Counted from the first letter of the stretch, positions 1,702 through 34,648 are shown. The stretch: 64,000 nucleotides of DNA from Obrimoposthia wandeli (GCA_977020255.1 CDROCS010000998.1:62001-126000), one strand, 5' to 3'. Notes: generated by a model from the letters alone, not told the origin. Numbers and translations are program-made.

Positions 1702-2526
1702 ATGAAAAAGCACGTTAAAGTAGAGAAAAGCACACTAGGTGCTTTTAATAAGGACGGAATCGCACATTTTTCAGCGCGTCTAAAAGAACTAATTGGGAAT
1801 GAATCTATTCGGAGCTTTGGGGAGAGTGTCGGGATTACAGATAGTGGTTTACGAAAATACCTTCCGCCAAATAGCTCCAAGCCTACTTTTGATAAGTTGG
1901 TGGCTATTGCCGATTACAAAGGTGTTCGACTTGAATGGCTGGCGACAGGGAATGGACCTAAGTTAACAGAGTCAACTTCTCACACAATTGAACATTTTCA
2001 GCCTAAAAATCACATTAATAAGAACCTGAAATGGGACAATTTGATTTCTGTCAGTGCTTACTGCAATGACGACGCACAGCAAGAAGATGAAGCCAACGAT
2101 GCTATTAATGAAGAGTTTGTATTAGTTCCAGGCTATCACATTCAAGTATCTGCAGGTCACGGTACATCAGCTATCGATGCGCCAGTGAAGCGATACCTAG
2201 CATTCAGACGTAAATATATTCAATACCGGAAATTGGATCCTAATAAGCTTGCTGTCATTTTTGCTAAGGGCGATTCGATGGATCCGACGATCAAGGATAA
2301 CGATTCACTGCTGATAGATCTCAATGCTAATAAGCCACTTGATGGGAAGATCTTCGTCGTTCGTTTAGGTGATGAGCTTTATGCCAAGCGCGTCCAAAAG
2401 AGCTTCGATGGATCGCTGCGCCTAATCAGTGATAATAAAGAGTATTCTCCGATAGAAGTTTCGACAGACCAACTCGACCAGCTTTGCATCATAGGTCGTG
2501 TTGTTCAGCGCTCAACAGATCTTTAA
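1702..2526 (+). CDS. Phage repressor, HTH + S24 peptidase (cI/LexA-like)
   Basis: N-terminal HTH; VSAGHG Ala-Gly cleavage-type site; GDSMDP catalytic Ser and YAKRVQ Lys. Confidence 0.92.
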   Translation: MKKHVKVEKSTLGAFNKDGIAHFSARLKELIGNESIRSFGESVGITDSGLRKYLPPNSSKPTFDKLVAIADYKGVRLEWLATGNGPKLTESTSHTIEHFQPKNHINKNLKWDNLISVSAYCNDDAQQEDEANDAINEEFVLVPGYHIQVSAGHGTSAIDAPVKRYLAFRRKYIQYRKLDPNKLAVIFAKGDSMDPTIKDNDSLLIDLNANKPLDGKIFVVRLGDELYAKRVQKSFDGSLRLISDNKEYSPIEVSTDQLDQLCIIGRVVQRSTDL

Positions 2527-4005: not shown

Positions 4006-4714
4006 CTGTCCTTTTTTGTTAACTCGCAGTAGTAACCGCTTCGGTAATGAATGCAAATGCATCCGATAAAGTGCTTTCTAATGTCTGGGCCGCTAACAAC
4101 CAAGCGGCAAAATGCTAGGCAAAGCATTAACTGTTATTGAGGCCACCGTATTTCGTCAATGATGGTTGCCCCTCACCTTCGGCGAAATTTAAAGCTTACC
4201 CATTTTATAGTAGACCTGATGGCCCATTTCGTGCACCCAAGTCGTCACAATTCTGACTGATAAATTAAGTTAATTATCTGCCGCTGCTGAAAATGACCAA
4301 TATCGGGGGAGGCAAGGCGCGGTAAGTGTCACCATCAAGGGCTAACTCACTCTTACCTTCATGGGTACGCTCTAGGAAATTCAGATACGTTTTTGAGCCA
4401 GTCACCATCACGGCAATGGCTTCAACGTAGGGGGCTAATAATGGAGGGTTTATCGAAACCAAAAGATAAGCCGCACCATTGCAGTGCGGCTTTGTTCGAT
4501 TTACTTACCTTCGTCTACCTACTCAGCACACGCAAGGTTTTTACTGTATATCGTCTTTCTGTCTTCGCCACTCATTACGATGAGTATGCCGTATTCGATG
4601 CTATAAGTAGCTTTATCGAACTAGTCTGTATTGGCGAAGTAAAACAAATTTTCGGTGTATCTACCAAATTGTTAACACTGAAGTTGTCGACTTAGTGCTT
4701 TTCGCATTACACAT

Positions 4715-6337: not shown

Positions 6338-7198
6338 GTGCAGATAGATGAAAGTTATCAAAGAAGGATCGATAAGGTGTGTGATTACATATATGCACAC
6401 CTCGACGACGAGCTAACCGTTGAGGATCTCAGTAAAGTCGCTCACTTCTCTAAGTATCACTTTCACCGCCAATTCACACACTATATGGGTATTGGTGCAT
6501 TCAAATTTATTCAACAGCTAAGGCTTAAGCGCGCTTCTTATCAGCTTTTTTTTCATCGAGACACGCGCATAATCGATATCGCTCTTGATGCTAATTTTGA
6601 ATACCCAGAATCTTTTTCACGTGCATTCAAAAAAGTATTTGCTCAATCGCCTTCTGAATTTCGCCACCAATCTAACTGGTTGCAATGGCATCAAAAATAT
6701 CATTATCGAGAGATAAAATTGGAGAAGAATATGAAGGTTGAAATTAAACACTTCGCTAAAACAAAAATAGCCGTCATGGAGCACCAAGCAGCCCCTGAAC
6801 TCGTCAACGAATCTGTCGGCCGATTCATTGAATGGCGTAAAACCACGGGTCTATCGCCCATTCTAACCAGTCGATCTTTTGGTATCATTTATAACGACCC
6901 AAAAGTAACAGCACCAGAAGATTTTCGGTTTGATATTTGTGGCGAAGTAAAAACAGCAATTAAAGACAATACGTTTGGCATTGTAAATAAAACACTTTCA
7001 GCAGGTAGATGTGCTGTTATTAGGCATCATGGCTCTCATAACGGCTTAGATACGAAAATTCATTACCTTTATGGTCAATGGTTACCTGAAAGCGGTGAAG
7101 AATTACGCGATGACCCCTGTTTCTTTCACTATATGAATTTCTTTCCTGAAGTGTCTGAACATGAATTAATTACTGATATTTACCTGCCATTGAAATAA
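6338..7198 (+). CDS. AraC-family regulator with C-terminal GyrI-like ligand-binding domain
   Basis: N-terminal AraC double HTH (SKYHFHRQF, FSRAFKK) and C-terminal GyrI-like domain (YNDP...FRFDIC, YGQWLPESG). Confidence 0.9.
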   Translation: MQIDESYQRRIDKVCDYIYAHLDDELTVEDLSKVAHFSKYHFHRQFTHYMGIGAFKFIQQLRLKRASYQLFFHRDTRIIDIALDANFEYPESFSRAFKKVFAQSPSEFRHQSNWLQWHQKYHYREIKLEKNMKVEIKHFAKTKIAVMEHQAAPELVNESVGRFIEWRKTTGLSPILTSRSFGIIYNDPKVTAPEDFRFDICGEVKTAIKDNTFGIVNKTLSAGRCAVIRHHGSHNGLDTKIHYLYGQWLPESGEELRDDPCFFHYMNFFPEVSEHELITDIYLPLK

Positions 7199-7260: not shown

Positions 7261-7289
7261 AAAACGGCTTGCGGCATCAGAGCCGTTTT
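7261..7289. repeat. Degenerate copy of REP/terminator-like palindrome family A
   Basis: AAAACGGCTTGCGGCATCAGAGCCGTTTT, compared with copies at 10137, 13011 and 14456. Confidence 0.55.
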
Positions 7290-7440
7290 ATTAAACAGTT
7301 AAGACGTCCATATTGCCCCTATCTACAATACTTTCATGTGTATAGATTACCTTTCTTAAATATCAAATTAATTAAATGTATATTTAAAATACCTCTTTAT
7401 AGGGGTAGTATCGTAGCCACAACTAACAAAAACGAAAATT

Positions 7441-10116
7441 ATGATGGCTATTTCTCGTCGTACCTTATTAAAAACCTCTATTGCCACAGCTGTTGCCGCA
7501 GCGGGTGGTTTTACGATCTTTCCAGCGTCGAAAATCTTTGCTGACGATGATGTTGATGTCATTCCACACGCGAGCCACTGGGGTCCGTTTAACGCAATAG
7601 TTAAAGACGGCATTTTAATTGGTGTTCAGCCTCTTAAAGAACTGGATGCGATGCCAACTGAGATGTTGACCGAAGGTCTTCTGAGCCGCGTCTATGATAA
7701 AACTCGGGTGAAATATCCCATGGTCAGAAAATCTTACCTTGCAGATCCAAAAGGTGACAATAAGCCCCATTTACGCGGAAAAGAACCTTTTGTACAAGTC
7801 AGCTGGGAAACGGCTTTATCCCTTGTGGCCGATAGCATTCAAACCACAGCTCAAGAATATGGAAATGAGGCTATTTTCAGTAGCTCTTATGGAGGGTGGT
7901 CTCATGCAGGTTTAATGCGACCTCAAGTATTGCAAGGGCGTTTCTTTAATTTGATCGGCGGGCAAAGTACAACAACGGGCGATTACTCTGGGGGCGCATC
8001 TCAAGTTATCTTGCCCCACGTTATTGGCGATATGGAAGTCTACTCGCCACAAACAGCATGGCCTGTTATTGAAAAACACACTGAAGTATTTGTGCTCATC
8101 GGTTGTGACCCTTGGAAAAATAATCGCATTGAATTTCGCGTCGCTGATCATCAAATGTACCCTCGCTGGAAACAGTTTGCCGAGAAAGGCATTCAATTTA
8201 TTTCGATCAATCCACAGCGTACCCGTACCGATGATGAAATGGATGCTGAATGGGTCAAGATCGTGCCTAATACCGATACCGCCCTGTTTCTTGCTATGGC
8301 GCAATATGCCTATGAAAAAGAACTGTATAACCCAACGTATTTAGCGCGCTATACCGTGGGTGCCGATAAATATATTGACCATCTAATGGGTAAAAACGAT
8401 GGAATTGTGAAATCACCACAATGGGCAGAAAAAATTACGGGTATTTCTGCAGAAAAGATCAAAGAAATGGCAAAGCTGTTCGCTAACAAGAAAACACAGT
8501 TTGCCGCAGGCTGGTCACTTCAACGGGCTGATCATGGTGAAATGGTTCACTGGGCGATCATTAATTTTGCAGCTATGTTGGGTAAAATAGGCAAGCCAGG
8601 AGAAGGGGTTGGTTTTAGCTGGCACTATGGTAACGGCGGCATGCCTCAATCAGGCAAAGCATTGCCTGTTGGTTTATCACAGGGCAAAAATCCGGTAGAT
8701 AAAGTTTGTCCTGCTTCACGTATCTCTGAAATGTTAAATAACCCAGGTAAACGCTTTACCCGTGATGGCATAGAATATACCTACCCTGATGTTAAAGTCG
8801 TTTATAACGCTGGTAATAATCTCTTATCACATCAGCAGAATACCAACGAGTTGATTACGGCATTAAACCAAAAGGTCGATACCTTTATTTGCCAAGATCC
8901 CTGGTGGTGTGCTTCTTCCCGCTATGCTGACATCGTACTGCCTGCAACGAGTTCGCTAGAACGTGATGACCTTTCCTCTGGCGGCACATACAGTAACGAT
9001 AAAATCTATGCGATGCGCCAAGTAATCCAACCTTATGGCGAAAGTTTGGATGACTTTGAAATTTTCCGTCGACTCTCAAAAATATTTGGGGTCGAAGAGC
9101 AATTTACCGATGGTTTAGCCTTCAATGATATTTTAAAACGTGCTTATAAAGCCTCATCAGCCACCTTGCCATTTGAAGACTTTTGGCTACAAGGTGTCGC
9201 GCACCTCCCTATCGCTGAATCTGCCAATGACTGGGTAAGGCATGGGGATTTCTATCAAGATCCTGAACAATTCCCACTTCATACCACATCAGGAAAAATT
9301 GAGCTTTACTGCCAAGATATTGCTGATTTTGAAGTGAAAGATTGCCCACCGATGCCAACCTTCATTGAACCGTTTGAATACCTTGGTAATGCAAAAACCA
9401 ATGCCGTGCATGTTGTTAGCCCTCACCCGTATATGCGCTTGCACTCTCAAATGGCAAATTCGGATGTACGTAAACGTGAAGATGTACAAGGAAGACAATA
9501 CGTACTGATAAACAATCAAGATGCTGAAAAGCATGGAATCCGTTCTGGTCAACTGGTTGAAATTTTTAATGATCGTGGACGAATTATTGCAGGCGCAAAA
9601 GTGTCGGATAAAATCATGCAAGGGGTGATCAGCCTAGAAGAAGGCGCATGGTTACAGTTTGACAGTCAGGGGCGCTGTAACAGCGGAGCGATTAATGTTT
9701 TAACCTCTAGCAATGCTTCCAGTGAGTTAAGCCAAGCCAACAGTGCAAATACCTGTTTAGCGTATATCCAACGCTGTCGAGACTCAGAATCATCGAACTT
9801 GGCTTTTGAACCACCACAAATATTAACGACAGACAACGGCACTAATATTGCCAAGCTGAATATCACCCTTGCGGTCGATCAAATAAAGCAAAATGATGTT
9901 AAGCAAAGCGTGGGGGAACAGCTTTTTTATCAACGTTGCACCATGTGTCATTCAGCAAAAGATCCCCGTCAATACACCAAAGTACAATGGCAAGGCATTA
10001 CCAAAAGTATGTTCCCTCGGGCAGGATTAAACCCCGCAGAGAGAAAGCAAGTAATGGACTTTCTTGAGGAAAACGCAAAAGACAGCAAAGATGGGGCTAA
10101 GGTAGGCAGCCTCTAA
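7441..10116 (+). CDS. Tat-exported molybdopterin S/N-oxide reductase (TorZ/BisC/DorA type) fused to a C-terminal monoheme cytochrome c
   Basis: SRRTLLK twin-Arg signal; HASHWG; SYGGW; GDYSGGA (Mo-Ser); no N-terminal Fe-S motif; C-terminal LFYQRCTMCH...SM heme-c domain. Confidence 0.9.
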   Translation: MMAISRRTLLKTSIATAVAAAGGFTIFPASKIFADDDVDVIPHASHWGPFNAIVKDGILIGVQPLKELDAMPTEMLTEGLLSRVYDKTRVKYPMVRKSYLADPKGDNKPHLRGKEPFVQVSWETALSLVADSIQTTAQEYGNEAIFSSSYGGWSHAGLMRPQVLQGRFFNLIGGQSTTTGDYSGGASQVILPHVIGDMEVYSPQTAWPVIEKHTEVFVLIGCDPWKNNRIEFRVADHQMYPRWKQFAEKGIQFISINPQRTRTDDEMDAEWVKIVPNTDTALFLAMAQYAYEKELYNPTYLARYTVGADKYIDHLMGKNDGIVKSPQWAEKITGISAEKIKEMAKLFANKKTQFAAGWSLQRADHGEMVHWAIINFAAMLGKIGKPGEGVGFSWHYGNGGMPQSGKALPVGLSQGKNPVDKVCPASRISEMLNNPGKRFTRDGIEYTYPDVKVVYNAGNNLLSHQQNTNELITALNQKVDTFICQDPWWCASSRYADIVLPATSSLERDDLSSGGTYSNDKIYAMRQVIQPYGESLDDFEIFRRLSKIFGVEEQFTDGLAFNDILKRAYKASSATLPFEDFWLQGVAHLPIAESANDWVRHGDFYQDPEQFPLHTTSGKIELYCQDIADFEVKDCPPMPTFIEPFEYLGNAKTNAVHVVSPHPYMRLHSQMANSDVRKREDVQGRQYVLINNQDAEKHGIRSGQLVEIFNDRGRIIAGAKVSDKIMQGVISLEEGAWLQFDSQGRCNSGAINVLTSSNASSELSQANSANTCLAYIQRCRDSESSNLAFEPPQILTTDNGTNIAKLNITLAVDQIKQNDVKQSVGEQLFYQRCTMCHSAKDPRQYTKVQWQGITKSMFPRAGLNPAERKQVMDFLEENAKDSKDGAKVGSL

Positions 10117-10136: not shown

Positions 10137-10170
10137 AACGGCTCTGGGCATACCCTCAGAGCCATTTTTT
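10137..10170 (+). terminator. Palindrome family A copy acting as likely terminator
   Basis: AACGGCTCTGGGCATACCCTCAGAGCCATTTTTT just after the reductase stop. Confidence 0.7.
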
Positions 10171-10228
10171 CAAAATCAGACAACGAATTGTCTTGAGCGA
10201 TATAATATCGGGTTAAGAAAGCACGTAA

Positions 10229-10738
10229 TTACATGCTTATATTTTTTGACATATTGTAGCCCGAGATTGTAAATCCAACCTCTTGATACAGAGCTAGTGC
10301 TCGTTGGTTATGGTAAGCAACGCGCAGTTTAATCTGATTGATGCCCTGTGAAGCCAATTGGTTTTCTAATGCTGAAATTGCTTGCTTACCATACCCATTT
10401 CTTCGATGCTCATCTGCCACATAAAAATCATAGATAAACGTCGATGAATCACTTTTGTTGAGCGAATGCCACAAATAACCGATAACCTCAGGCTTACCGG
10501 CCAAGTGGATTTCGATGCACAACAAATCATGCTCGCTGCTTTCTAGTCCGTGTGGAAAAGATTTAACGAGCTCTTTCTGAGCCATCTCTGTTGCAACCTG
10601 CATTGAGTGCCCATAATTTTCAGCTATTTCATGGCTATAATCAGCTATGAAATAGTCACAGTAAGCGGGATATTCATCCACACGCATTTCTCGAAGGTTA
10701 ACCACGTCAAAATCCTTTTGGGTTGTCAATAAATGCAT
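10229..10738 (-). CDS. GNAT family N-acetyltransferase
   Basis: Acetyl-CoA motif HRRNGYGK; N..ALALYQEVGF. Confidence 0.9.
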   Translation of the reverse strand: MHLLTTQKDFDVVNLREMRVDEYPAYCDYFIADYSHEIAENYGHSMQVATEMAQKELVKSFPHGLESSEHDLLCIEIHLAGKPEVIGYLWHSLNKSDSSTFIYDFYVADEHRRNGYGKQAISALENQLASQGINQIKLRVAYHNQRALALYQEVGFTISGYNMSKNISM

Positions 10739-13190: not shown

Positions 13191-13329
13191 GGCCCACCGG
13201 TAACCCGAGCGTGTACAACATTTTCAAGCCACTCTATCTTTGTGTTTATGTAACATAGTTTTAACTAAATCTTGTAAGGACACAAAACCGATAACTATTG
13301 TTAATATTACCAATTGCCAGGAGGCAAAC

Positions 13330-14427
13330 ATGATAAAGGAACTTAGAATCATAATTGCTCTATTGTTTATTTCTCTTAGCACCACAGTTCTTGCGACACA
13401 AACAGAACTTCCTGCACTGAATGCTCTTCCCAACGAAACCTCCATATCAGGGTTATCCTCCGGTGCTTTTATGGCGGCTCAATTCCATGTCGCCTACTCT
13501 AAAGATCTGGTTGGCGCAGGAATAGTCGCAGGTGGGCCATGGAACTGTGCCGGCAACAATCCATTCAGCAACCCGTTTATTACGCCAATTCTGAACGCAA
13601 CAACGACCTGCATGAATCCCTGTAAAAACAGCATTGTCGGCTGCCCGTCAATAATGTACCCAGACAGTGATTTTTTGGTCGATCTTGCGAAAGACACAGC
13701 TGATTCCGATGAAATTGATGCCGTAGACAATCTGAAGGATGACAAAGTATATATCTTCTCTGGAGCAAGTGATAAAACCGTCGTGACAGGCGTTGTCGAC
13801 ACCACCGCTAAGTTTTACCAGAAACTAGGAGTGAGTGAAGATCATATACTGTACAACAAGCAAATTAACGCAGGCCATGCCTTTATCACCACCGATCAAA
13901 ACGACACCCAGTGCGACAAAACTCAAGAACCGTTTATCAATAATTGCGATATTCCGCAGGCTCAGCGTATTCTCGAACACATATACGGTGATCAGAACCC
14001 TGCAGCCAAGAAATTAAGCGGCGAACTCATTGAGTTTAATCAGAGTGCCTTTTTTGACAACCCACTCACGAGCATGGACGAAACCGCGTTTGTGTATATA
14101 CCCGAAAATTGCCGTGCAGAGCAATGTAAAGTTCATGTCGCCGTACATGGCTGTGAACAAGGCGCCTCCGAAATAGGGACAAAATATGTAAAGGAAACGG
14201 GTTATTTAGAAGCCGCAGATACCAACAGCATGGTTGTGCTCTTCCCTCAAGTTAATAAATCAATGCTAAACCCTATGAATCCCAATGGGTGTTGGGATTT
14301 CTGGGGTTATAGTACCAACAATCTTCCACCGTATAATTACTACAGTAAAGATGCGCCGCAGATGGTAGCGATTAATAAAATGATTGCTCGCCTGATCAGT
14401 AAACCACTGCATCTCACACAAAAATAA
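13330..14427 (+). CDS. Secreted poly(3-hydroxybutyrate) depolymerase-like esterase, catalytic domain only
   Basis: GGAGG RBS at ATG 13330; signal peptide; SISGLSSGAFMA lipase box, GASD, GHAF, HGC and GCWDFWG motifs. Confidence 0.8.
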   Translation: MIKELRIIIALLFISLSTTVLATQTELPALNALPNETSISGLSSGAFMAAQFHVAYSKDLVGAGIVAGGPWNCAGNNPFSNPFITPILNATTTCMNPCKNSIVGCPSIMYPDSDFLVDLAKDTADSDEIDAVDNLKDDKVYIFSGASDKTVVTGVVDTTAKFYQKLGVSEDHILYNKQINAGHAFITTDQNDTQCDKTQEPFINNCDIPQAQRILEHIYGDQNPAAKKLSGELIEFNQSAFFDNPLTSMDETAFVYIPENCRAEQCKVHVAVHGCEQGASEIGTKYVKETGYLEAADTNSMVVLFPQVNKSMLNPMNPNGCWDFWGYSTNNLPPYNYYSKDAPQMVAINKMIARLISKPLHLTQK

Positions 14428-25050: not shown

Positions 25051-26412
25051 TTAGCTGAGTGCTACAGCGACATCTTCCTCAACGGTACTTGAACAGGCTA
25101 ATACAAACCCTTGCGCAATTTCTTCTGCGGTAAGCGTTTCAGTACTGGTCGACTTTACTGAGCCTTTGGTTACTTTGCACTTACACGATCCACAAACACC
25201 TGCGCGGCAAGCGCCAATAATAGGCACACCATTATTTTCTAATACTTCTAATAATGATGAACCTTGTGCTACTTCAGTTTCTACTGAAAAGTCAGGAACG
25301 TGCAACATCACACTGGCTGTAGAAGCGTCTGATGAGATCTGATCTTGTTGCTCGTTATTTGCAGCAGGGGTAAAGCTTTCTTGAAAGAAGTTGGCCATAT
25401 CGAAATCACTTTCTTGAGCAATATTCTCTACCGCTTTCATAAAGCCAACAGGACCGCACAGGAAGATAGTTCGTTCTTTCAGATCAGGGTATAGCTGTTG
25501 AATAACGTCTGAACTCACCATGCCAGTTTGATGTGACAAAGCACTGCTATCCGTCTTTTTATTAGCACTGTCATCAGCACTAAAACTAGCAAAACCTTCA
25601 CTATTTTCTAACAGTAATTGCACGTTAAAGTGTTTATGCTGAGCAAGTAATGCCTTCATTTCATCATGGAAGATAACGTTGTCTTTGTCTCGGGCACAAT
25701 GTAAGAATTCAATATCAGTATCGCTATCATGCGTTAACAATGTTTTGGCTATCGACATGACGGGGGTAATACCACAACCCGCACTGATAAGCAGTAGTTT
25801 AGGCTTGTGCTTGCAATCACTGCTATTAAATTGACCCGCAATGTTTAATGCTGACAAGCTATCGCCAATATTTAGATGGTCTGCAAGCCAGTTAGACACT
25901 AAGCCATCTGGTACGCGTTTAATGGTTAAGCGTAATTGTTTTTGTTGTGGTACAGAGCTAATTGAATAAGCACGATAATGCGTTTTGTTATCTATTTTGA
26001 CTGCTAATGTCACGAACTGACCGGGCTTAAAATCAAACAATGTTTCATCGGCGGCTGCAAAGGTAAAGCTCATCGAGTCATGTGTTTCTTCTTCACGTTT
26101 AACTAAGATTAACGCTGTTGTTGAAGGTGACCATGACGCTGGTTTTTTAATAGCATTTGCGGTTGATTCGCCAAGAGAGAGTGCAGCCAACTTTGGTTTA
26201 GTAAATAGCGGCTTTGCAAATGTTTTTGTGGTGTCTGATTTAGCTGTATTCTGTGAATCACCACCGAGTGAAAAACTAAGCTTAGGAGTCGATAGCTTTG
26301 GTGATGAAGGTTTTGTTGATTGACCAAGACCTGAACTATTTAGTTTAAGTGGCTTAAAAGCCGGTGCTGATAGTGTTGATGAAGGCGTTTTCGACGAAGA
26401 CATTATTTGCAC
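25051..26412 (-). CDS. hcr: NADH oxidoreductase for hybrid-cluster protein (FAD/NAD + 2Fe-2S) with long N-terminal low-complexity extension
   Basis: RAYSISS, AGCGITP, CGP..FM, CRAGVCGSC...C; directly downstream of hcp. Confidence 0.9.
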   Translation of the reverse strand: MQIMSSSKTPSSTLSAPAFKPLKLNSSGLGQSTKPSSPKLSTPKLSFSLGGDSQNTAKSDTTKTFAKPLFTKPKLAALSLGESTANAIKKPASWSPSTTALILVKREEETHDSMSFTFAAADETLFDFKPGQFVTLAVKIDNKTHYRAYSISSVPQQKQLRLTIKRVPDGLVSNWLADHLNIGDSLSALNIAGQFNSSDCKHKPKLLLISAGCGITPVMSIAKTLLTHDSDTDIEFLHCARDKDNVIFHDEMKALLAQHKHFNVQLLLENSEGFASFSADDSANKKTDSSALSHQTGMVSSDVIQQLYPDLKERTIFLCGPVGFMKAVENIAQESDFDMANFFQESFTPAANNEQQDQISSDASTASVMLHVPDFSVETEVAQGSSLLEVLENNGVPIIGACRAGVCGSCKCKVTKGSVKSTSTETLTAEEIAQGFVLACSSTVEEDVAVALS

Positions 26413-26590
26413 CCATGGCTGTAATAATTAAAGGTTGAATGTGTAAAGAGGGGGAATGAGCATTGATTAAAGTCGAACGATGTTTAATAACATGTTGAAC
26501 GTCTTTAACCAATGCTGCATATGATCGCTATTTATTAACGAGATTGTTAGTGAGCACTATTTATTAACAAGTGCTATTTGTTAGCCAATA

Positions 26591-28255
26591 CTATTTACCC
26601 GCTAACATAGTTGCTAAGTCAGTTTCAACATCGCCAACACTGCGCATATCAAAGTTATCTTGTAATGCTTTGATTAAGTTGTCAGTTAAGAATGCAGGTG
26701 CTGTTGGGCCGGTATAAATACCTTTGATGCCTAAAGCGAATAGCGTTAATAACACGACGATCGCTTTTTGCTCGAACCAAGATAAAACGATGCTTAATGG
26801 CAGCTCGTTAACACCACAATCAAACTCTTCTGCCAGTGCTAACACTAACTGAATTGCAGAGTAAGTATCGTTACATTGACCAACATCTAATAGACGTGGA
26901 ATACCATTGATGTCGCCAAACTCTTTCTTGTTAAAACGGTATTTACCACAAGCCAGAGTAAGTACAACTGAATCTTCAGGTGTATTAACAGCAATATCAG
27001 TGAAGTAGCTACGTTCTTCTTTATCGCCGTCACAACCACCGATTAGGAAGAAGTGTTTGATGTTACCCGCTTTAACTTCATTGATAACTGCAGGTGCAGC
27101 AGCCATTAATGCGTTGCGACCAAAACCAACAGTGATCATGTGTTCAATTTCAGTATGCGCAATACCTTCTTGCGCTAAAGCACATTCGATAACTTGCGAG
27201 AAATCATCGCCTTCAATATGAACAACACCAGGCCAGCCAACAATGCTACGAGTAAATAGACGATCTGCGTATTGACCTACGTTTGGATTGATTAGACAAT
27301 TTGATGTCATCACAATTGCGCCAGGGAAGTTAGCAAATTCTTTTTGTTGATTCTGCCAAGCGCTACCGAAGTTACCCACTAAGTGTGGGTATTTGTTTAG
27401 TTCAGGGTAACCGTGTGCAGGTAGCATTTCACCATTGGTGTAAACGTTAATGCCTTTGCCTTCAGTTTGTTGCAGAATTTTTTCTAAATCATGTAAGTCA
27501 TGACCAGAAACAAGAATACACTTACCCGCAATAGGTTTTACGTTTACTTGTGTTGGTTGTGGGTGACCAAAAGTATTTGTTTCGCCTCGGTCTAGAATTT
27601 CCATAATGCGGTAGTTAAGTAGACCAATTTGCATTGATGTTTCAAGCAGAGCATTTGCATCTGTTGGATCAGTACCTAAGAACGCCATGATTTGATGATA
27701 TTCAGCGCAGATTGATTCTTCACTTTGACCAAGTACATTCGCATGTTCCATGTATGCTGCAGCACCTTTAAGGCCATACAGACATAATAAACGCAGACCA
27801 ATGATATCTTCATGCAGTTCTTCGTGACCACGGTTTACAGCCGCTTCTGGTGCAAAGTTCATGATTTCTTCAGCGGTTGCTGGTAACACAAACTGCGCTG
27901 CTGGTGATAATTCAGGTAGTGCTTCACCAGCTGCTGCTGCTGCTGCCATTACTTGTGTGCTTAACTGGATCTTATAACGCTCGGCAATCTCAGTGTATTC
28001 AGTAATACGCTCTGGCACAAAGTTCACGTTAGTTAATGTAGAGAAGAATGCACGTGGTGCCCAAGCATCAATTTCAGCATCGATAATGTTGTATTTACGC
28101 GCTAGCTCTGCCCAAAAAGATACGCCTTGCAAGTTAAATACTAATACGTCTTGTAGGTCAGACACATCAGCTGTTTTACCACACATACCTTGAGTATAAG
28201 AACAACCTTTAGTTGTAGGTGTTTGGACAGTTTGCTCACATTGAATACAGAACAT
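26591..28255 (-). CDS. hcp: Hybrid cluster protein (hydroxylamine/NO reductase)
   Basis: MFCIQCEQT...[38 protein letters not shown]. Confidence 0.97.
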
Positions 28256-28315
28256 CTAGGACTCCGTTATAATTATATTATTAATATCGAATTAACGATG
28301 ATTTCGAATTCTAAA

Positions 28316-28332
28316 TGCATCTAACGTGCCAA
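28316..28332 (-). promoter_or_regulatory. sigma54 (-24/-12) promoter of hcp
   Basis: Minus strand TTGGCACGTTAGATGCA = GG-N10-GC, about 60 bp upstream of the hcp ATG. Confidence 0.85.
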
Positions 28333-28381
28333 CTTTTATATTGTTGATATTTAACGATTTTTACTTTTATCGATATTGCTC

Positions 28382-28425
28382 TTGATGTGGTTATCACAAC
28401 ACGATTGATGTGATAATTACATCAA
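28382..28425. promoter_or_regulatory. Two NorR-type GT-N7-AC enhancer sites
   Basis: TTGATGT-GGTTATC-ACAAC (28382) and perfect TTGATGT-GATAATT-ACATCAA (28405). Confidence 0.75.
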
Positions 28426-28442
28426 CTGCGTTTATATTAATT

Positions 28443-30011
28443 TTATACTAACTCTGCGGTACGTAATTCTTTGGGTTCAATACCGAGTTTCTTCCCCATT
28501 TTGTATAAATTACCGCGATCCATCTGTAAAAAGTCCGCTGCTTGCGCCCACACAAAGTTTGATTGCTGTAGGGCATGGGAAATAAGCTTGGTTTGATAAA
28601 TTTCAACGGCACCGCGTAGTTCAAATGATGTCGTAGGCAAGTCATTGGCTTCAGATTCTGTCGAGCAGGAGTAAGTATGACTCACTTCATCAGACAAGTG
28701 TTCCTGTAAGATCAAGCTTTGCTGTGTCTGAATAGCCCGTAAGCCTGCACGCATTAAGGTATGTTCTAATTCTCGAACATTACCAGGCCAACTATAACCA
28801 GTCAGTGCGGTTAAGGATTTCGGGTGTAATTGTAATTTAGCCACATTGAATTGAGTACGAACTCGGTCAAGTATATGCCCAGATAATACCGCGATATCAC
28901 CTTGTCGATGACGCAGCGGTGGCACATTTATCGGGAATACATTTAAGCGGTGAAATAGGTCACTTCGAAAGCGACCTGCAGCGACTTCTTCAGTTAGCTC
29001 ACGGTTAGTGGCAGCGATAATACGGACATTAACCATTAAGTTTTTATCTGCACCGACACGTTGCACTTCTCCTTGCTGAATAACGCGTAGCAATTTTGCT
29101 TGCATTAATAAAGGTAACTCACCAATCTCATCTAAGAATATCGTACCGCCATCAGCCAATTCAAATTTACCTGCGCGATGACTGTTTGCCCCAGTAAAAG
29201 CGCCTTTAACATGGCCAAACAATTCACTTTCAGCCAGTGATTCTGGTAGTGCGGCACAGTTTACGTAAATCATCGGCAGTGTGGCGCGTGACGAATTTGA
29301 ATGTACGGCATGAGCGACAAGCTCTTTGCCTGTACCTGTTTCACCACTGATGAGTACCGCATAATCAGAGTAGGCAACCATGCTTATATTATCACGCAGG
29401 CTTTGGATCTCTGGGCTTACACCCACTAACTCGCCACCTTTTTTTCGCGCTTCTTGGATCAAAACTTGATTCATGTTTTTCTGTTGGCGATGGCTTTTTC
29501 GTAGGGCTTCAACTTGATTTACATTTCTAATTGTCGCTGCGGCTAACGCTGCAAAGGTCGCAACGGTAATATCATCAATACTGTTGAAAGCCCCTACCTG
29601 CATAGCATCGAGAGTGATAAGCCCAACTAAATGATCTTCGACGTATAAACTGCAACCCATGCAATCATGCACGTTTATCGAGCGGTTTGGATCGTTTTTT
29701 AATAATCCATCAAATGGGTCGGGTAAGGTTGACGTTGCAGGAAATCGTACGGGCTCATGACTGGTTAAAATAGCCTGAAGACGAGGGTGTTGCTGCGGAT
29801 CAAACTTCTGACCGAGTACTTCATCTGATAAACCATTAACAGCAGCGGCAGACAATAAACCAGAATCATCCAGAATAAACAAAGCACTAGCATCACAAGG
29901 TAGTACTGATTGCAGTGACTGCATTAAACGCTGGTAATGGTGCCCTGAAGGCAAATTTAAATTGAGATCAAGTGCAATTTGTAACATTGCTTGGTCGAGA
30001 GTCGTTTGCAT
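28443..30011 (-). CDS. norR: NO-responsive sigma54 enhancer-binding protein (GAF-AAA+-HTH)
   Basis: GAF with HDCMGC; GETGTGKE, ESELFGHVKGAFTGA, LFLDEIGE, WPGNVREL; Fis-type HTH. Confidence 0.9.
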   Translation of the reverse strand: MQTTLDQAMLQIALDLNLNLPSGHHYQRLMQSLQSVLPCDASALFILDDSGLLSAAAVNGLSDEVLGQKFDPQQHPRLQAILTSHEPVRFPATSTLPDPFDGLLKNDPNRSINVHDCMGCSLYVEDHLVGLITLDAMQVGAFNSIDDITVATFAALAAATIRNVNQVEALRKSHRQQKNMNQVLIQEARKKGGELVGVSPEIQSLRDNISMVAYSDYAVLISGETGTGKELVAHAVHSNSSRATLPMIYVNCAALPESLAESELFGHVKGAFTGANSHRAGKFELADGGTIFLDEIGELPLLMQAKLLRVIQQGEVQRVGADKNLMVNVRIIAATNRELTEEVAAGRFRSDLFHRLNVFPINVPPLRHRQGDIAVLSGHILDRVRTQFNVAKLQLHPKSLTALTGYSWPGNVRELEHTLMRAGLRAIQTQQSLILQEHLSDEVSHTYSCSTESEANDLPTTSFELRGAVEIYQTKLISHALQQSNFVWAQAADFLQMDRGNLYKMGKKLGIEPKELRTAELV

Positions 30012-32604: not shown

Positions 32605-34608
32605 CTATGCTGTATGCATATTTAACTTTTTTTGAGCCAAGCCTTCACCTTTATATATAAAGTAAAGCAAAGTCCCTACAAGTATCAAAGTAACCGCTAG
32701 GCCGTATATAAACCCTTGGCCTAATACTCCTGTTGTGATTAAAGTCCCAGCCTGATAAGTGATAAATGCAACCACGTACCCCATACCAAATTGGAATCCG
32801 ATACCTGCCCATAGCCATTTTTTATCTTCCATTTCTGCGTTCATTGCACCTAAAGCCGCAAAACATGGTGGCGTAAATAGGTTGAAGATCAAGTACGATA
32901 ATGCAGCTACTGAAGATAACCCCATAATGCTTGCAACATCTGAACCGCCAGAAATCAATGCAAGCTCTTCTGTATCAATAAAGTTAGTAATGCCATAAAC
33001 AACCGCTAATGTGCCAACCACATTCTCTTTTGCAATAAACCCTGTGATTGCAGCTGCCGCCAATTGCCATACGCCAAACCCGAGTGGTATTAACACTAAT
33101 GCAAATGGTGATGCAATACTTGCCAAGATACTTGTTCCAGCGGCACCTTCAGCAACCACCTCAAACTGCCAGTTAAATGTTTGCATTACTTGTACAACGG
33201 CGTTACATAGCAGAATAATGGTACCTGCTTTAATAATAAATGCCTTTGCTCTTGAGAGCGTAGAAATAACGGCTCGTTTTACACTTGGGAATCGATATTC
33301 AGGTAATTCCATGATGAAGAATGAGCGCGCATTTTTTTCGCCCGTGATACGCACAACAACCAATGCACCAAAGGTGATGATAGCAATGCCTAGAAAGTAC
33401 ATAGATGTTCCAACCCATGCCGCATCATTGAAAAAGACACCTGCAAATAATGCAATGACTGGAAGTTTCGCACCGCAAGGCATGAATGGGGTTAACATCG
33501 CAGTCGTTCGTCTTTGTCTTTCGTTTTGTATTGTTCTTGTTGCCATGATGCCTGGAATTGCACATCCAGTACCAATAACCATTGGGATAATTGATTTACC
33601 AGATAAACCAAGATGTTTAAAAAAGCGATCCATAATGACCGCAACACGTGCCATATAGCCACAATCTTCAAGTAATGCGAGCAAGAAAAATAGCACCATA
33701 ATCAAGGGTAAGAACCCGACAACAGCGCCAACACCACCGATTATACCGTCTAACAGTAACGCGCCTAATACAGGTGAAACGTCGCTACCTAATAATCCTT
33801 CTACTAAGCCGTAAAATGCATCAATCCAACCCACCAACAGATCCGCTAAAATCGGTCCTAAATGGGTTTGTGAAATAGAAAATACACTCCACATGATCAG
33901 TGCAAAAATAGGCAGTCCAAACCATTTATTGGCGACAACCCTATCGACAGTATCTTGTGCTGTTTGTCTATTATTTTTGACTTTTCTTTGTTCTACTTTT
34001 CCTACGATGTTTTTTACAAATTCAAAGCGTTTAATATCTGAAGCTTCGACTAATTTAGCATTGCTTAAATCAACACCATCACTAACGAAAGGCGCAGTTT
34101 GGTGTTTGCCTGTGAGCTCAATGGCTGCAGATACAACATTATCTAAACCATTTTTAGCGCTTTTTGTAGAGGTCGTTTCAACGACAGGGCATCCCAGCAA
34201 TTTACTTAATGTTTGAGTATCAATGATTGTTTTTTTGCTTTTGGTTAAATCACTTTTATTCAGTGCCACCACAACCGGAATATCAAGCTCTAAAAGTTGA
34301 GTAGTAAAAAATAAACTACGACTTAAATTTGTGGCATCAACAATATTAAGGATCACATCTGGCTTTTCATTCTTCACAAAATCTCGCGTGATCGCTTCTT
34401 CTGAGGAAAAAGGTGACATTGAATAAGCGCCGGGTAAATCAACAACAGTAATTTCAGCATCCGTTTTATTAAACGCTTTTTTTACTAGTCCTTCTTTTTT
34501 ATCTACGGTAACTCCCGCCCAGTTGCCAACATGGGCTGTCTTCCCCGTTAACGCGTTGAATAAAGTGGTTTTTCCACTATTGGGGTTACCCGCTAATGCT
34601 ATTTTCAA
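32605..34608 (-). CDS. feoB: Ferrous iron transporter B
   Basis: GNPNSGKTT, VGNWAGVTV, DLPG, NKSD GTPase motifs; gate/PCGAKLP motifs; TTG start at 34608 after AGGAG. Confidence 0.96.
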   Translation of the reverse strand: MKIALAGNPNSGKTTLFNALTGKTAHVGNWAGVTVDKKEGLVKKAFNKTDAEITVVDLPGAYSMSPFSSEEAITRDFVKNEKPDVILNIVDATNLSRSLFFTTQLLELDIPVVVALNKSDLTKSKKTIIDTQTLSKLLGCPVVETTSTKSAKNGLDNVVSAAIELTGKHQTAPFVSDGVDLSNAKLVEASDIKRFEFVKNIVGKVEQRKVKNNRQTAQDTVDRVVANKWFGLPIFALIMWSVFSISQTHLGPILADLLVGWIDAFYGLVEGLLGSDVSPVLGALLLDGIIGGVGAVVGFLPLIMVLFFLLALLEDCGYMARVAVIMDRFFKHLGLSGKSIIPMVIGTGCAIPGIMATRTIQNERQRRTTAMLTPFMPCGAKLPVIALFAGVFFNDAAWVGTSMYFLGIAIITFGALVVVRITGEKNARSFFIMELPEYRFPSVKRAVISTLSRAKAFIIKAGTIILLCNAVVQVMQTFNWQFEVVAEGAAGTSILASIASPFALVLIPLGFGVWQLAAAAITGFIAKENVVGTLAVVYGITNFIDTEELALISGGSDVASIMGLSSVAALSYLIFNLFTPPCFAALGAMNAEMEDKKWLWAGIGFQFGMGYVVAFITYQAGTLITTGVLGQGFIYGLAVTLILVGTLLYFIYKGEGLAQKKLNMHTA

Positions 34609-34648
34609 AACAAATCTCCTAATAATACATAGTAATGATAATAACAAT

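What the first reader, a model, noticed from the sequence alone, without database searches (positions are those of the whole stretch)
7441..10116. Stand-alone Tat molybdoenzyme with its own fused monoheme cytochrome c
Seen: twin-Arg signal, DorA/TorZ-type active-site pattern (SYGGW with Tyr, GDYS Ser ligand, no Fe-S), then a ~30-aa linker and a ~70-aa CxxCH domain (QRCTMCH, distal Met in KSMFP) in one continuous frame; no torC/torY/torD next to it. Known: TorA/TorZ/DorA receive electrons from the C-terminal monoheme domain of a separate membrane pentaheme TorC/TorY/DorC; Tat exports folded proteins, while Ccm attaches heme c in the periplasm to unfolded CxxCH substrates normally delivered by Sec. 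Inference: the electron-donor domain has been grafted onto the catalytic subunit, making a self-contained reductase that needs a new upstream donor (NapC/CymA-type or soluble cytochrome) and a hybrid Tat-then-Ccm maturation route. The substrate (TMAO, DMSO, Met- or biotin-sulfoxide) is open.
Basis: partly seen in the sequence, partly recalled or inferred. Interest (0 to 1): 0.78.

Follow-up and report, generated by a model that had tools for sequence, protein, structure and literature searches.

The report
TMAO-type reductase fused to its cytochrome
This Photobacterium gene encodes a periplasmic molybdenum S/N-oxide reductase, probably acting on TMAO, joined in one chain to the small haem protein that normally hands it electrons; the fusion is real and found in over 200 species but seems never to have been studied, and it raises the question of how one protein uses two incompatible maturation routes.

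Summary
Window 7441-10116 (+) is one uninterrupted 891-aa ORF with four parts: a twin-arginine signal (SRRTLLK), a Dor/Tor-type Mo-bisMGD catalytic part (Tyr150, Ser183, no Fe-S motif), a roughly 30-aa linker, and a monohaem CxxCH domain. [quoted passage not shown] It is closer still (50% identity) to a stand-alone "TorB-like" cytochrome encoded just downstream of an unfused Mo enzyme.

The fusion is no sequencing artefact. 218 species-representative genomes carry it (Vibrionaceae, Shewanella, Beta- and Alphaproteobacteria, Bacteroidota). CxxCH and the Met are kept in every member aligned.

It forms a tight clade: at least 61% identity across phyla, against 37-38% to E. coli TorA/TorZ/BisC. 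Its active-site loop, SYGGWSH, is specific to the clade.

In 40 of 63 loci outside the Vibrionaceae clade the gene sits beside torS/torT/torR, with no torC or torD, which points to TMAO. In this window it is monocistronic, with terminator-like hairpins on both sides and no conserved neighbours.

The closest known system is Campylobacter jejuni TorA + TorB, which is fed by the bc1-type Qcr complex.

Not tested: covalent haem, the Tat-then-Ccm maturation route, the upstream electron donor and the substrate. I found no paper describing the fusion. Verdict: a new variant of a known kind, of moderate to high interest.

The parts
7271..7293 (+). Terminator-like hairpin plus T-run after the upstream AraC/GyrI gene. 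It isolates the reductase gene from upstream transcription.
   Evidence: stem 7271-7286, then TTTATTAAAC; sequence
7374..7405 (+). Upstream element conserved among Photobacterium and Aliivibrio copies, roughly AAATGTrCATnTAAAATnnnnCTTTAwrGG. Probably a promoter or regulator site; the regulator is unknown.
   Evidence: alignment A2; no consensus sigma-70 promoter found here
7441..10116 (+). Whole gene: 891-aa precursor of the fused molybdoenzyme-cytochrome c, stop codon included.
7441..7542 (+). Twin-arginine (Tat) signal peptide, residues 1-34: SRRTLLK motif, hydrophobic core, likely cleavage after IFA.
   Evidence: sequence; weak Pfam TAT_signal hit, 16.6 bits against a cut-off of 22.7; RR kept through the family. 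The cleavage site is inferred.
7543..9816 (+). Catalytic Mo-bisMGD part, residues 35-792, Dor/Tor type (type III DMSO reductase family, no Fe-S cluster).
   Evidence: Pfam; TIGR00509 850 bits; PDB DorA 609 bits, MtsZ 591, TorA 511; AlphaFold model against MtsZ/DorA, TM 0.91-0.94 normalised to the target
7888..7890 (+). Tyr150, the counterpart of DorA Tyr114. It lies in the clade-specific loop S-Y-G-G-W-S-H, which has one extra Gly between Tyr and Trp.
7987..7989 (+). Ser183 in GDYS, the counterpart of DorA Ser147, the protein ligand of Mo.
   Evidence: invariant in A4
9817..9906 (+). Linker, residues 793-822. Variable in sequence, hydrophilic, low model confidence.
   Evidence: alignments A1 and A3; pLDDT 51-52 for residues 800-820
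9907..10113 (+). Monohaem cytochrome c domain, residues 823-891, homologous to the TorC/TorY C-terminal domain and to TorB-like stand-alone cytochromes.
   Evidence: structural matches to DHC cytochromes (Z 6.9 and 6.8) and SorB (Z 5.0)
9937..9951 (+). Haem-attachment motif C833-T-M-C836-H837.
   Evidence: invariant in A1, A3 and A4
10009..10011 (+). Met857 in SMFPRAGL, the candidate sixth haem ligand. It aligns with a Met of TorC and TorY.
   Evidence: The ligand role is inferred.
10140..10173 (+). Terminator-like hairpin (9 pairs) plus T-run 24 nt after the stop codon. The gene is monocistronic.
6338..7198 (+). Upstream AraC-HTH/GyrI-like regulator gene. It is present at this position only here and in P. 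profundum, so it is not a conserved partner.
10229..10738 (-). Convergent GNAT acetyltransferase gene; unrelated neighbour.

Best explanation
The gene encodes a self-contained periplasmic S/N-oxide reductase, most likely a TMAO reductase isoenzyme. [quoted passage not shown]

Inferred sequence of events:
- The catalytic part folds and receives Mo-bisMGD in the cytoplasm.
- The Tat system exports it by its SRRTLLK signal. It drags along a hydrophilic tail of about 99 residues (linker plus apo-cytochrome) that is still haem-free.
- In the periplasm the Ccm system attaches haem to C833/C836. His837 and probably Met857 serve as axial ligands.
- The tethered haem then acts as the built-in electron entry point to the molybdenum centre, which reduces the oxide.
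- Electrons reach the haem from a carrier encoded elsewhere in the genome. This is either a NapC/NirT-family quinol dehydrogenase (TorY/CymA/NapC type) or the bc1-to-cytochrome c route shown for C. jejuni TorAB. I rate the two about equally.

Shown here: the architecture, the homologies, the conservation, the distribution and the gene contexts. Inferred: haem attachment, the order of maturation, the direction of electron flow, the donor and the substrate.
For: - One intact ORF with all four parts.
- The catalytic part has the Dor/Tor fold and ligands.
- The C-domain is homologous to the last domain of TorC/TorY. It is 50% identical to a stand-alone, signal-peptide-bearing monohaem cytochrome encoded 25 nt downstream of an unfused Tor/Dor-type gene.
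- CxxCH and the Met are kept in every member aligned.
- 218 species genomes carry the fusion. All 120 nearest protein clusters have the fused length, apart from one cut at a contig end.
- 40 of 63 loci outside the Vibrionaceae clade sit directly beside torS/torT/torR. A TorC-like gene is nearby in only 2 of them, and no conserved cytochrome gene lies within 10 kb.
- The tail is 88-99 aa and hydrophilic in 73 members. That is below the 100-120 aa of unstructured hydrophilic chain that Tat is reported to tolerate (PMC6708511).
- C. jejuni TorA works with a separate TorB homologous to the TorC C-domain and depends on Qcr (PMC6195509).
- RNA-library contigs from marine sediment cover the gene.
Against: - No experiment shows covalent haem, Tat export or activity.
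- Cytochrome c given a Tat signal needed haem before export, and an scFv with an unstructured tail was rejected by Tat (PMC6708511). The proposed export of an apo tail is therefore not trivial.
- In this window and in all 17 loci of the main Vibrionaceae clade there is no torSTR next to the gene. The TMAO assignment for this copy rests on family membership and the shared active-site loop.
- Tyr150 is the residue that E. coli TorA lacks and that all S-oxide reductases aligned in PMC5122715 keep. S-oxides remain possible substrates.
- Scores fall below NCBI's curated cut-offs for bisC_fam and TorA.
- The contigs in RNA libraries do not prove transcription.
Confidence: 0.72

Rival explanations
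1. Donor variant A: the fused haem is fed by the quinol:cytochrome c oxidoreductase (bc1, or alternative complex III in Bacteroidota), directly or through a soluble cytochrome c, as in C. jejuni TorAB. TMAO reduction would then be coupled to a proton-motive Q cycle.
For: - The C-domain is nearest to TorB-like stand-alone cytochromes.
- In C. jejuni, TorB/TorA depend on QcrABC and no TorC exists (PMC6195509).
- No NapC/TorC-type gene accompanies the fused gene in 78 of 80 loci.
- From my own knowledge: the carriers named are groups that possess bc1 or ACIII, and no Enterobacterales (which lack bc1) appear among them.
Against: - PMC6195509 itself notes that ubiquinol (+90 mV) cannot readily drive TMAO reduction (+130 mV) through a Q cycle against the membrane potential.
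- From my own knowledge: many carriers (Thauera, Aromatoleum, Alcaligenaceae) are ubiquinone-only organisms.
- The donor genes could not be examined, because only 20-kb loci were available.
Confidence: 0.35
2. Donor variant B: the fused haem is fed by a membrane NapC/NirT-family tetrahaem quinol dehydrogenase encoded elsewhere (TorY, CymA, NapC or NirT type). This would recreate a TorC split between two polypeptides, without energy conservation at this step.
For: - The domain is homologous to the part of TorC that naturally receives electrons from such a tetrahaem module.
- Two Rhodocyclales loci (L049, L058) place the fused gene next to a conventional torCAD.
- It is thermodynamically the easier route for ubiquinone-only hosts (my inference).
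Against: - No such gene lies within 10 kb in 78 of 80 loci, nor in this 64-kb window.
- The known system that uses a free TorB-type cytochrome, C. jejuni, lacks TorC.
Confidence: 0.35
3. In the Vibrionaceae clade, to which this window belongs, the enzyme is not a TMAO reductase. It would be an S-oxide reductase (DMSO, methionine sulfoxide or biotin sulfoxide) used for scavenging or repair, like MtsZ or BisC.
For: - Tyr150 is present, as in DorA, TorZ, BisC and MtsZ, and absent in E. coli TorA (PMC5122715).
- No torSTR is adjacent in any locus of the main Vibrionaceae clade.
- The best PDB sequence matches are DorA and MtsZ, not TorA.
Against: - The active-site loop SYGGWSH and at least 61% overall identity are shared with the torSTR-linked members. 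A substrate switch inside so tight a clade is not indicated.
- DorA-type enzymes with this Tyr also reduce N-oxides (PMC13488963).
Confidence: 0.25
4. The enzyme runs in the oxidising direction: a dehydrogenase that oxidises a reduced S or N compound and passes the electrons through the fused haem to the cytochrome c pool and a terminal oxidase.
For: - Mo enzymes with cytochrome c partners often work this way. SorAB sulfite dehydrogenase is one, and its SorB subunit is among the structural matches of the C-domain.
- The gene lacks any quinol dehydrogenase partner.
Against: - Linkage to the TMAO-sensing torSTR set in 40 loci.
- All characterised Dor/Tor-type relatives are reductases.
- The nearest partner cytochromes, TorC and TorB, are electron donors.
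Confidence: 0.06
5. The fusion is an artefact (a sequencing error hiding a stop), or the C-terminal domain is a decaying haem-free remnant.
For: Short hits in the domain-only search at first looked like separate genes.
Against: - The same continuous frame occurs in 218 species genomes and in all 120 nearest clusters, apart from one cut at a contig end.
- The domain is among the best conserved parts of the protein, with CxxCH and the Met always kept.
- Independent contigs cross the junction without indels.
- The two short hits on long contigs whose loci could be read are pieces of frameshifted assemblies.
Confidence: 0.01

Closest known systems
Campylobacter jejuni TorA (Cj0264) + TorB (Cj0265), the Qcr-dependent TMAO/DMSO reductase (Garg, Taylor & Kelly 2018, PMC6195509)
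   Same: [quoted passage not shown] A natural two-gene version found here (L089/P0215) has a haem core 50% identical to the window's domain.
   Different: There the two are separate proteins, and the cytochrome has its own signal peptide. Here they form one polypeptide behind a Tat signal. The catalytic part belongs to a different, tight clade (SYGGWSH loop). Dependence on bc1 is not shown for the fused form.
E. coli TorCAD and TorYZ; Rhodobacter DorCA
   Same: Same catalytic fold and Ser ligand. The C-domain aligns with TorC residues 312-378 of 390 and TorY residues 305-361 of 366. Most relatives outside the Vibrionaceae clade share the TMAO sensor set torS/torT/torR.
   Different: - Identity to E. 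coli TorA/TorZ/BisC is only 37-38%, and scores fall below the curated family cut-offs.
- The haem domain is attached to the enzyme instead of to a membrane tetrahaem quinol dehydrogenase.
- No torD chaperone and no torE lie beside it.
- Tyr150 is present, unlike in TorA.
Haemophilus influenzae MtsZ (TorZ-type methionine sulfoxide reductase, 7L5I) and the three published Dor/Tor groups (PMC5122715, PMC8166771)
   Same: Best structural match (TM 0.94 normalised to the target). Tyr and Trp lie above the Mo site.
   Different: MtsZ works with a separate membrane cytochrome, MtsY. The passages I read of the published three-group phylogeny mention no cytochrome-fused clade. The fused clade sits on a long branch of its own.
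Tat-signal flavoprotein amine dehydrogenases fused to cytochrome c (FAO superfamily subclade 3F, PMC12224317)
   Same: A cofactor enzyme that must fold in the cytoplasm (there with FAD) carries a Tat signal and a c-type cytochrome domain in one predicted polypeptide. It faces the same Tat-versus-Ccm problem.
   Different: Unrelated catalytic domain and cofactor, working in the oxidative direction, and likewise only predicted from sequence.
SorAB sulfite dehydrogenase of Starkeya novella (2BLF)
   Same: A periplasmic Tat-type molybdoenzyme paired with a small monohaem cytochrome c. SorB is a structural match of the C-domain (Z 5.0).
   Different: A different Mo family (sulfite oxidase type), two separate subunits, and an oxidising direction.

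Membership tests
Dor/Tor-type (type III) DMSO reductase family S/N-oxide reductases | Molybdopterin_N + Molybdopterin + Molydop_binding domains and the four-domain fold around Mo-bisMGD | tested here: met
   Pfam E 4e-53, 4e-25 and 3e-13; model against MtsZ, DorA and TorA, TM 0.90-0.94 normalised to the target
Dor/Tor-type (type III) DMSO reductase family S/N-oxide reductases | Serine ligand to Mo (DorA Ser147) and no N-terminal Fe-S cysteine motif | tested here: met
   Ser183 in GDYS aligns with Ser147 and is invariant. The first Cys in the sequence is at residue 222.
Dor/Tor-type (type III) DMSO reductase family S/N-oxide reductases | Score above NCBIfam's curated cut-off for TIGR00509 (bisC_fam) | tested here: not met
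   850.2 bits against a cut-off of 1017.55. It is a relative of the curated subfamily but falls outside it.
TorA sensu stricto (NF011682 / TIGR02164) | Equivalog score; active site without the DorA-type Tyr114 | tested here: not met
   664 bits against 909, and 631 against 1465. Tyr150 is present where E. coli TorA has a gap.
TorC C-terminal domain / TorB-type monohaem cytochromes c | A single CxxCH with a downstream conserved Trp and Met, alignable over the whole domain | tested here: met
   TIGR02162 positions 323-385 of 387, E 4e-6; BLASTP 6e-8 and 6e-7; hhalign 91%; 50% identity to the stand-alone P0215
TorC C-terminal domain / TorB-type monohaem cytochromes c | Covalently bound haem c and electron transfer to the Mo enzyme | not testable with these tools
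   Needs haem staining, spectroscopy and kinetics
TorC / NapC / NirT pentahaem or tetrahaem quinol dehydrogenases | N-terminal membrane anchor and four further CxxCH motifs | tested here: not met
   The protein has only one CxxCH. No multi-haem ORF occurs in the window.
Tat substrates | N-terminal S/T-R-R-x-F-L-K motif followed by a hydrophobic stretch | tested here: met
   SRRTLLK at residues 5-11. The RR is kept in the family. The Pfam TAT_signal hit is weak, 16.6 bits against 22.7. Actual export was not tested.
TorS/TorT/TorR-controlled TMAO regulon | Adjacent torS, torT and torR genes, or a TorR-dependent promoter | tested here: not met
   None lies next to the gene in the window or in the 17 loci of the main Vibrionaceae clade. 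They are adjacent in 40 of 63 other loci. Regulation from a distance was not tested. A simple TTCATA search was uninformative.

The most novel reading that the evidence does not exclude
This family is a widespread, so far overlooked fourth group of Dor/Tor reductases. Its mature enzyme would carry both a cytoplasmically inserted Mo-bisMGD and a periplasmically attached haem c. That would make it a natural Tat substrate exported with an unfolded apo-cytochrome tail and finished by Ccm. In its many torSTR-linked hosts that lack TorC, it would couple TMAO respiration to the cytochrome c pool (bc1 or ACIII) rather than to a NapC-type quinol dehydrogenase.
Probability: 0.3. Interest if true: 0.75.

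Novelty: new variant of a known kind. Interest (0 to 1): 0.6.

Why it matters
- **Classification.** TMAO and S-oxide respiration is taught as a two-protein relay from TorC/DorC/TorY to TorA/DorA/TorZ. Here a third layout appears, with enzyme and terminal haem in one chain and no quinol dehydrogenase gene beside it. It occurs in at least 218 species, including denitrifying Betaproteobacteria, marine Vibrionaceae and Bacteroidota, and is the torSTR-linked reductase in most of them. The curated models tested (Pfam, NCBIfam) do not describe it, and the published Dor/Tor groupings I read do not mention it.
- **Maturation.** The family is a natural test of how a Tat cargo can carry a domain that must stay unfolded until Ccm attaches haem. 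Engineered constructs gave conflicting answers to that question.
- **Bioenergetics.** It offers a handle on whether TMAO reduction outside Campylobacter can be fed from the cytochrome c pool.
- **Practical use.** A single-gene, self-wired reductase would suit heterologous expression and bioelectrochemistry.
- **Tractable hosts.** A. fischeri ES114 carries a copy on chromosome II (complement of about 1,109,616-1,112,264 of NC_006841.2, derived). P. profundum carries one as well.

Tried and rejected
- **Sequencing error or hidden stop.** Rejected.
- **Plasmid origin.** Megablast against PLSDB found nothing.
- **Stand-alone close copies of the domain.** The word-based search returned only short proteins, most on very short contigs. 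Three sat on longer contigs: two proved to be pieces of frameshifted long-read assemblies and the third was not on record.
- **The upstream AraC/GyrI gene as the cognate regulator.** Rejected, because it is present only here and in P. profundum.
- **Conserved gene partners in Vibrionaceae.** None: neighbours differ between the window, A. fischeri and P. satsumensis.
- **TorR boxes.** Searching for TTCATA was uninformative.
- **A sigma-70 consensus promoter upstream.** None found.
- **Foldseek on the C-domain alone.** No hit with E below 0.001. The VIA-align wide search gave only moderate Z scores (6.9, 6.8, 5.0), all to c-type cytochromes.
- **Domain docking in the full-length AlphaFold model.** This could not be read, because coordinates are not returned.
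- **ESM Atlas.** The feature search gave leads only, all below 0.9; the first attempt failed because the machine was busy.
- **Literature.** Ten full-text searches found no description of a TorA-cytochrome fusion. The library lacks most subscription journals, so this is not proof.
- **Whole-genome check of donors** (TorC/NapC against bc1) in carrier genomes.
- **The tree** used FastTree, included the C-domain columns and had only five unfused outgroup sequences. It shows that the clade is distinct, not where it is rooted.
Full report
**1. What is in the sequence**

Window 7441-10116 (+) is a single open frame of 891 codons with no internal stop. Homologues begin MAISRR, so the second ATG at 7444 may be the real start.

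Pfam places Molybdopterin_N, Molybdopterin and Molydop_binding on residues 43-772. It gives a weak TAT_signal hit on residues 4-21.

NCBIfam scores are as follows:
- Best family: the S/N-oxide reductase subfamily TIGR00509, at 850 bits, below its cut-off of 1017.
- TorA models: 664 and 631 bits, also below their cut-offs.
- The last 63 residues hit the TorC model at its final positions, 323-385 of 387 (E 4e-6).

Aligned with R. sphaeroides DMSO reductase, Tyr150 corresponds to Tyr114. Ser183, in GDYS, corresponds to the molybdenum ligand Ser147. No cysteine occurs before residue 222, so there is no Fe-S motif. The haem motif is C833-T-M-C836-H837, and the candidate distal ligand is Met857 in SMFPRAGL.

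**2. The fusion is real and conserved**

A search scored on residues 785-891 alone found 52 proteins. All but one truncated 707-aa entry were full length, 870-917 aa. They come from Photobacterium, Aliivibrio, Moritella, Lautropia and metagenomes.

A search on the catalytic part found that the 120 nearest clusters (64-96% identity) are 879-903 aa long, apart from one cut at a contig end. Their hosts include Thauera, Paenalcaligenes, Pollutimonas, Shewanella, and the Bacteroidota Saccharicrinis, Tenacibaculum and a flavobacterium. The precomputed Pfam lists never show a cytochrome domain for these proteins, so the architecture is invisible to Pfam-based domain searches.

A scan of one genome per species found the C-terminal signature in 218 species. 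In the 80 loci fetched, the same long ORF is present except where a contig ends.

In alignments of 14, 22 and 44 members, the two Cys, the His and the Met are invariant. Three outliers change only the residues around the Met.

Contigs from marine-sediment RNA libraries, 90-95% identical to the window, cross the junction (9362-10094 and 9704-9965) without indels. Such contigs do not prove transcription.

The nearest copies are in P. indicum, P. frigidiphilum and P. profundum: 97% identity to P. indicum over the full protein and 88-95% over the C-terminal 138 residues. The window therefore comes from a Photobacterium of that group. Earlier scan notes show that the "genome" behind this scan mixes Photobacterium, Moritella and Colwellia pieces, so it is probably a metagenome.

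**3. What the two halves are**

*Catalytic part.*
- Best solved relatives by sequence: DorA (609 bits), H. influenzae MtsZ (591) and TorA (511 and 495).
- An AlphaFold model (pLDDT 85, pTM 0.88) superposes on MtsZ, DorA and TorA with TM 0.90-0.94 normalised to the target.
- Identity is only 37-38% to E. coli BisC, TorZ and TorA. It is 62-66% to fused members from Bacteroidota, Deinococcota and Alphaproteobacteria.
- In a FastTree the fused proteins form one clade on a long branch (0.9 changes per site), beside TorZ+BisC when rooted on TorA.
- The clade has its own active-site loop, S-Y-G-G-W-S-H, with one extra Gly between the Tyr and the Trp. DorA, TorZ and BisC have Y-G-W, and E. coli TorA lacks the Tyr.
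- The passages I read of the published phylogenies of this enzyme group describe three groups (TorA/DorA, MtsZ, BisC/TorZ) and mention no cytochrome-fused clade (PMC5122715 and PMC8166771).

*C-terminal domain.*
- It aligns end to end with the last domain of E. coli TorC (residues 312-378 of 390; 25% identity, E 6e-8) and of TorY (305-361 of 366; 30%, E 6e-7). The CxxCH, Trp and Met columns are shared. A profile comparison gives 91% probability.
- Its predicted fold is a small helical cytochrome c. The best structural matches are the dihaem cytochromes DHC (Z 6.9 and 6.8) and SorB, the haem subunit of a molybdenum sulfite dehydrogenase (Z 5.0). These Z values are moderate, but the top matches are all c-type cytochromes.
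- A profile search of 1.84 billion representatives found 2488 relatives.
  - The whole fused family collapses into one full-length representative at 50% identity, plus fragments.
  - Among the 140 newly returned proteins of the best 150, 75 are stand-alone monohaem proteins of up to 170 aa, and six have four or more haem motifs, like TorC.
- One stand-alone relative, P0215, is 192 aa with its own signal peptide and one CxxCH.
  - It is encoded 25 nt downstream of the 3' end of an unfused Tor/Dor-type gene.
  - That gene's product ends exactly where the window's linker begins.
  - The haem core of P0215 is 50% identical to the window's domain.
  - This is the split, two-gene form of the same system.

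**4. Closest known system**

In C. jejuni, TorA (Cj0264) works with TorB (Cj0265). [quoted passage not shown] There is no TorC, and TMAO reduction depends on the QcrABC (bc1-type) complex (PMC6195509). The window's gene is best described as a torA-torB fusion.

**5. Context and likely substrate**

In the window the gene is monocistronic.
- A hairpin with a T-run follows the upstream gene (7271-7293) and another follows the stop codon (10140-10173).
- Upstream lie an AraC/GyrI-type regulator and a SLAC1/TehA-type channel. Downstream is a convergent GNAT gene.
- The AraC gene is found at this position only here and in P. profundum.
- Neighbours in A. fischeri and P. satsumensis are unrelated.
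- A roughly 30-nt element at 7374-7405 is conserved upstream in Photobacterium and Aliivibrio. Its regulator is unknown.

Outside this Vibrionaceae clade the picture is uniform.
- In 40 of 63 distinct loci the fused gene lies directly beside torS (with the TorS sensor domain), torT and torR.
- A TorC-like gene is nearby in only two loci, which carry a separate conventional torCAD.
- TorD-like genes occur in four loci.
- No gene with several haem motifs is conserved within 10 kb.

TorT/TorS is the TMAO sensor (PMC5767261). Family-wide, the enzyme is therefore most likely a TMAO-induced reductase. For this copy that assignment is an extrapolation, supported by the shared active-site loop. Tyr150 keeps S-oxides possible.

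**6. How it most likely works**

*Shown:* the architecture, the homologies and the conservation.

*Inferred:*
- Mo-bisMGD is inserted in the cytoplasm, and export goes through Tat by way of SRRTLLK.
- The haem domain cannot be matured in the cytoplasm, so it must travel as an unfolded tail.
- The tail after the conserved AFEPP is 88-99 residues in 73 members, with mean hydropathy of -0.36 (window: 99 residues, -0.69).
- A Tat review reports that unstructured hydrophilic stretches of 100-120 residues can pass. The same review reports that cytochrome c with a Tat signal needed haem for export, and that an scFv with an unstructured tail was rejected (PMC6708511).
- The family's narrow tail length fits the tolerated range, but the route remains a hypothesis.
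- Ccm would then attach the haem, and the tethered cytochrome would feed the Mo site.

A parallel case exists in sequence data only. A subclade of Tat-signal flavoprotein amine dehydrogenases is fused to its cytochrome c (PMC12224317). The Tat-plus-haem-c combination is therefore not unique to this family, and it remains unexplored.

**7. The donor is unresolved**

*Route A, bc1 or alternative complex III through the cytochrome c pool.* This is favoured by the TorB kinship, by the C. jejuni precedent and by the absence of NapC-type neighbours. Against it stands the thermodynamic point made in PMC6195509, that ubiquinol cannot easily drive TMAO reduction through a Q cycle. From my own knowledge, many carriers use ubiquinone only.

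*Route B, a NapC/NirT-family quinol dehydrogenase encoded elsewhere.* This is thermodynamically easier. It fits the two loci that also hold torCAD, but it lacks any genomic linkage.

I rate the two about equally (0.35 each). Whole carrier genomes could not be inspected with the scans left.

**8. Verdict**

The gene belongs to the known Dor/Tor kind of enzyme and uses a known kind of partner haem. The covalent fusion, its own tight clade with a distinct active-site loop, its wide distribution and its linkage to torSTR without TorC or TorD make it a new variant.

I could find no description of it in ten full-text searches. That library lacks most subscription journals, so earlier mention elsewhere cannot be excluded.

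Noticed in passing
window 7374-7405: An element of about 30 nt, roughly AAATGTrCATnTAAAATnnnnCTTTAwrGG, is conserved 35-70 nt upstream of the start codon in Photobacterium and Aliivibrio copies, although the flanking genes differ. In the window it contains TACCTCT-N4-AGGGGTA, which resembles NarL/NarP heptamers, preceded by an AT-rich stretch resembling an ArcA box. Both resemblances are from memory and were not tested.
   Followed up: partly
window 9676-9678 and 9775-9777 (Cys746, Cys779): Two cysteines just before the linker (in GRCNSG, and in the (R/K)C(R/T)D motif before AFEPP) are invariant in 44 fused proteins. DorA has no cysteine at the aligned positions. They may form a periplasmic disulfide that pins the last strand of the catalytic part; no distance could be measured.
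   Followed up: no
L049 1376-16145 and L058 (Aromatoleum and Thauera MAGs): These loci hold a conventional torC-torA-torD set divergent from, or next to, the fused gene, with a single torT/torS/torR set beside them. Two TMAO reductase layouts may therefore share one sensor.
   Followed up: partly
P0200 (496 aa, from the profile search): A CcmH/CycH-type cytochrome c biogenesis protein (TPR_CcmH_CycH + Ig_CycH) carries the same type of monohaem domain at its C-terminus (residues 420-491, E 5e-19). A haem-maturation factor fused to a TorB-like cytochrome looks unusual.
   Followed up: no
P0190 / L091 (400 aa, 1.4-kb contig): A protein with a signal-peptide-like start and an unassigned N-terminal 315 residues ends in a C-domain almost identical to that of the fused family (127 bits). 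It is either a second fusion partner or a chimeric contig.
   Followed up: no
P0208, P0210, P0219-P0222, P0226-P0227 and others: Among the stand-alone relatives are many proteins of about 105-145 aa with lipoprotein-like N-termini (for example ...ACSKK...), and a few pass the Pfam DHC threshold. They form a large family of small cytochromes whose partners were not examined.
   Followed up: no
L046 9437-10390 (Shewanella marina): Only a 317-aa ORF carries the cytochrome end here, although the locus is not at a contig end. The gene may be disrupted in this species or assembly.
   Followed up: no
window 25051-30011 (-): This stretch holds a hybrid-cluster protein (Prismane), an adjacent FAD/NAD/2Fe-2S reductase, and a GAF-sigma54 activator of NorR type. 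Together they look like an hcp-hcr nitrosative-stress unit. A FeoB gene lies at 32605-34647.
   Followed up: no
window 13240-14427 (+) and 4393-4695 (+): ORFs of 395 aa and 100 aa with no Pfam match at E 0.001.
   Followed up: no
window 1702-2526 (+): A 274-aa protein combines an HNH endonuclease motif with a Peptidase_S24 (LexA/UmuD-like) domain. It lies close to the Mu-like prophage that earlier notes place just before the window.
   Followed up: no
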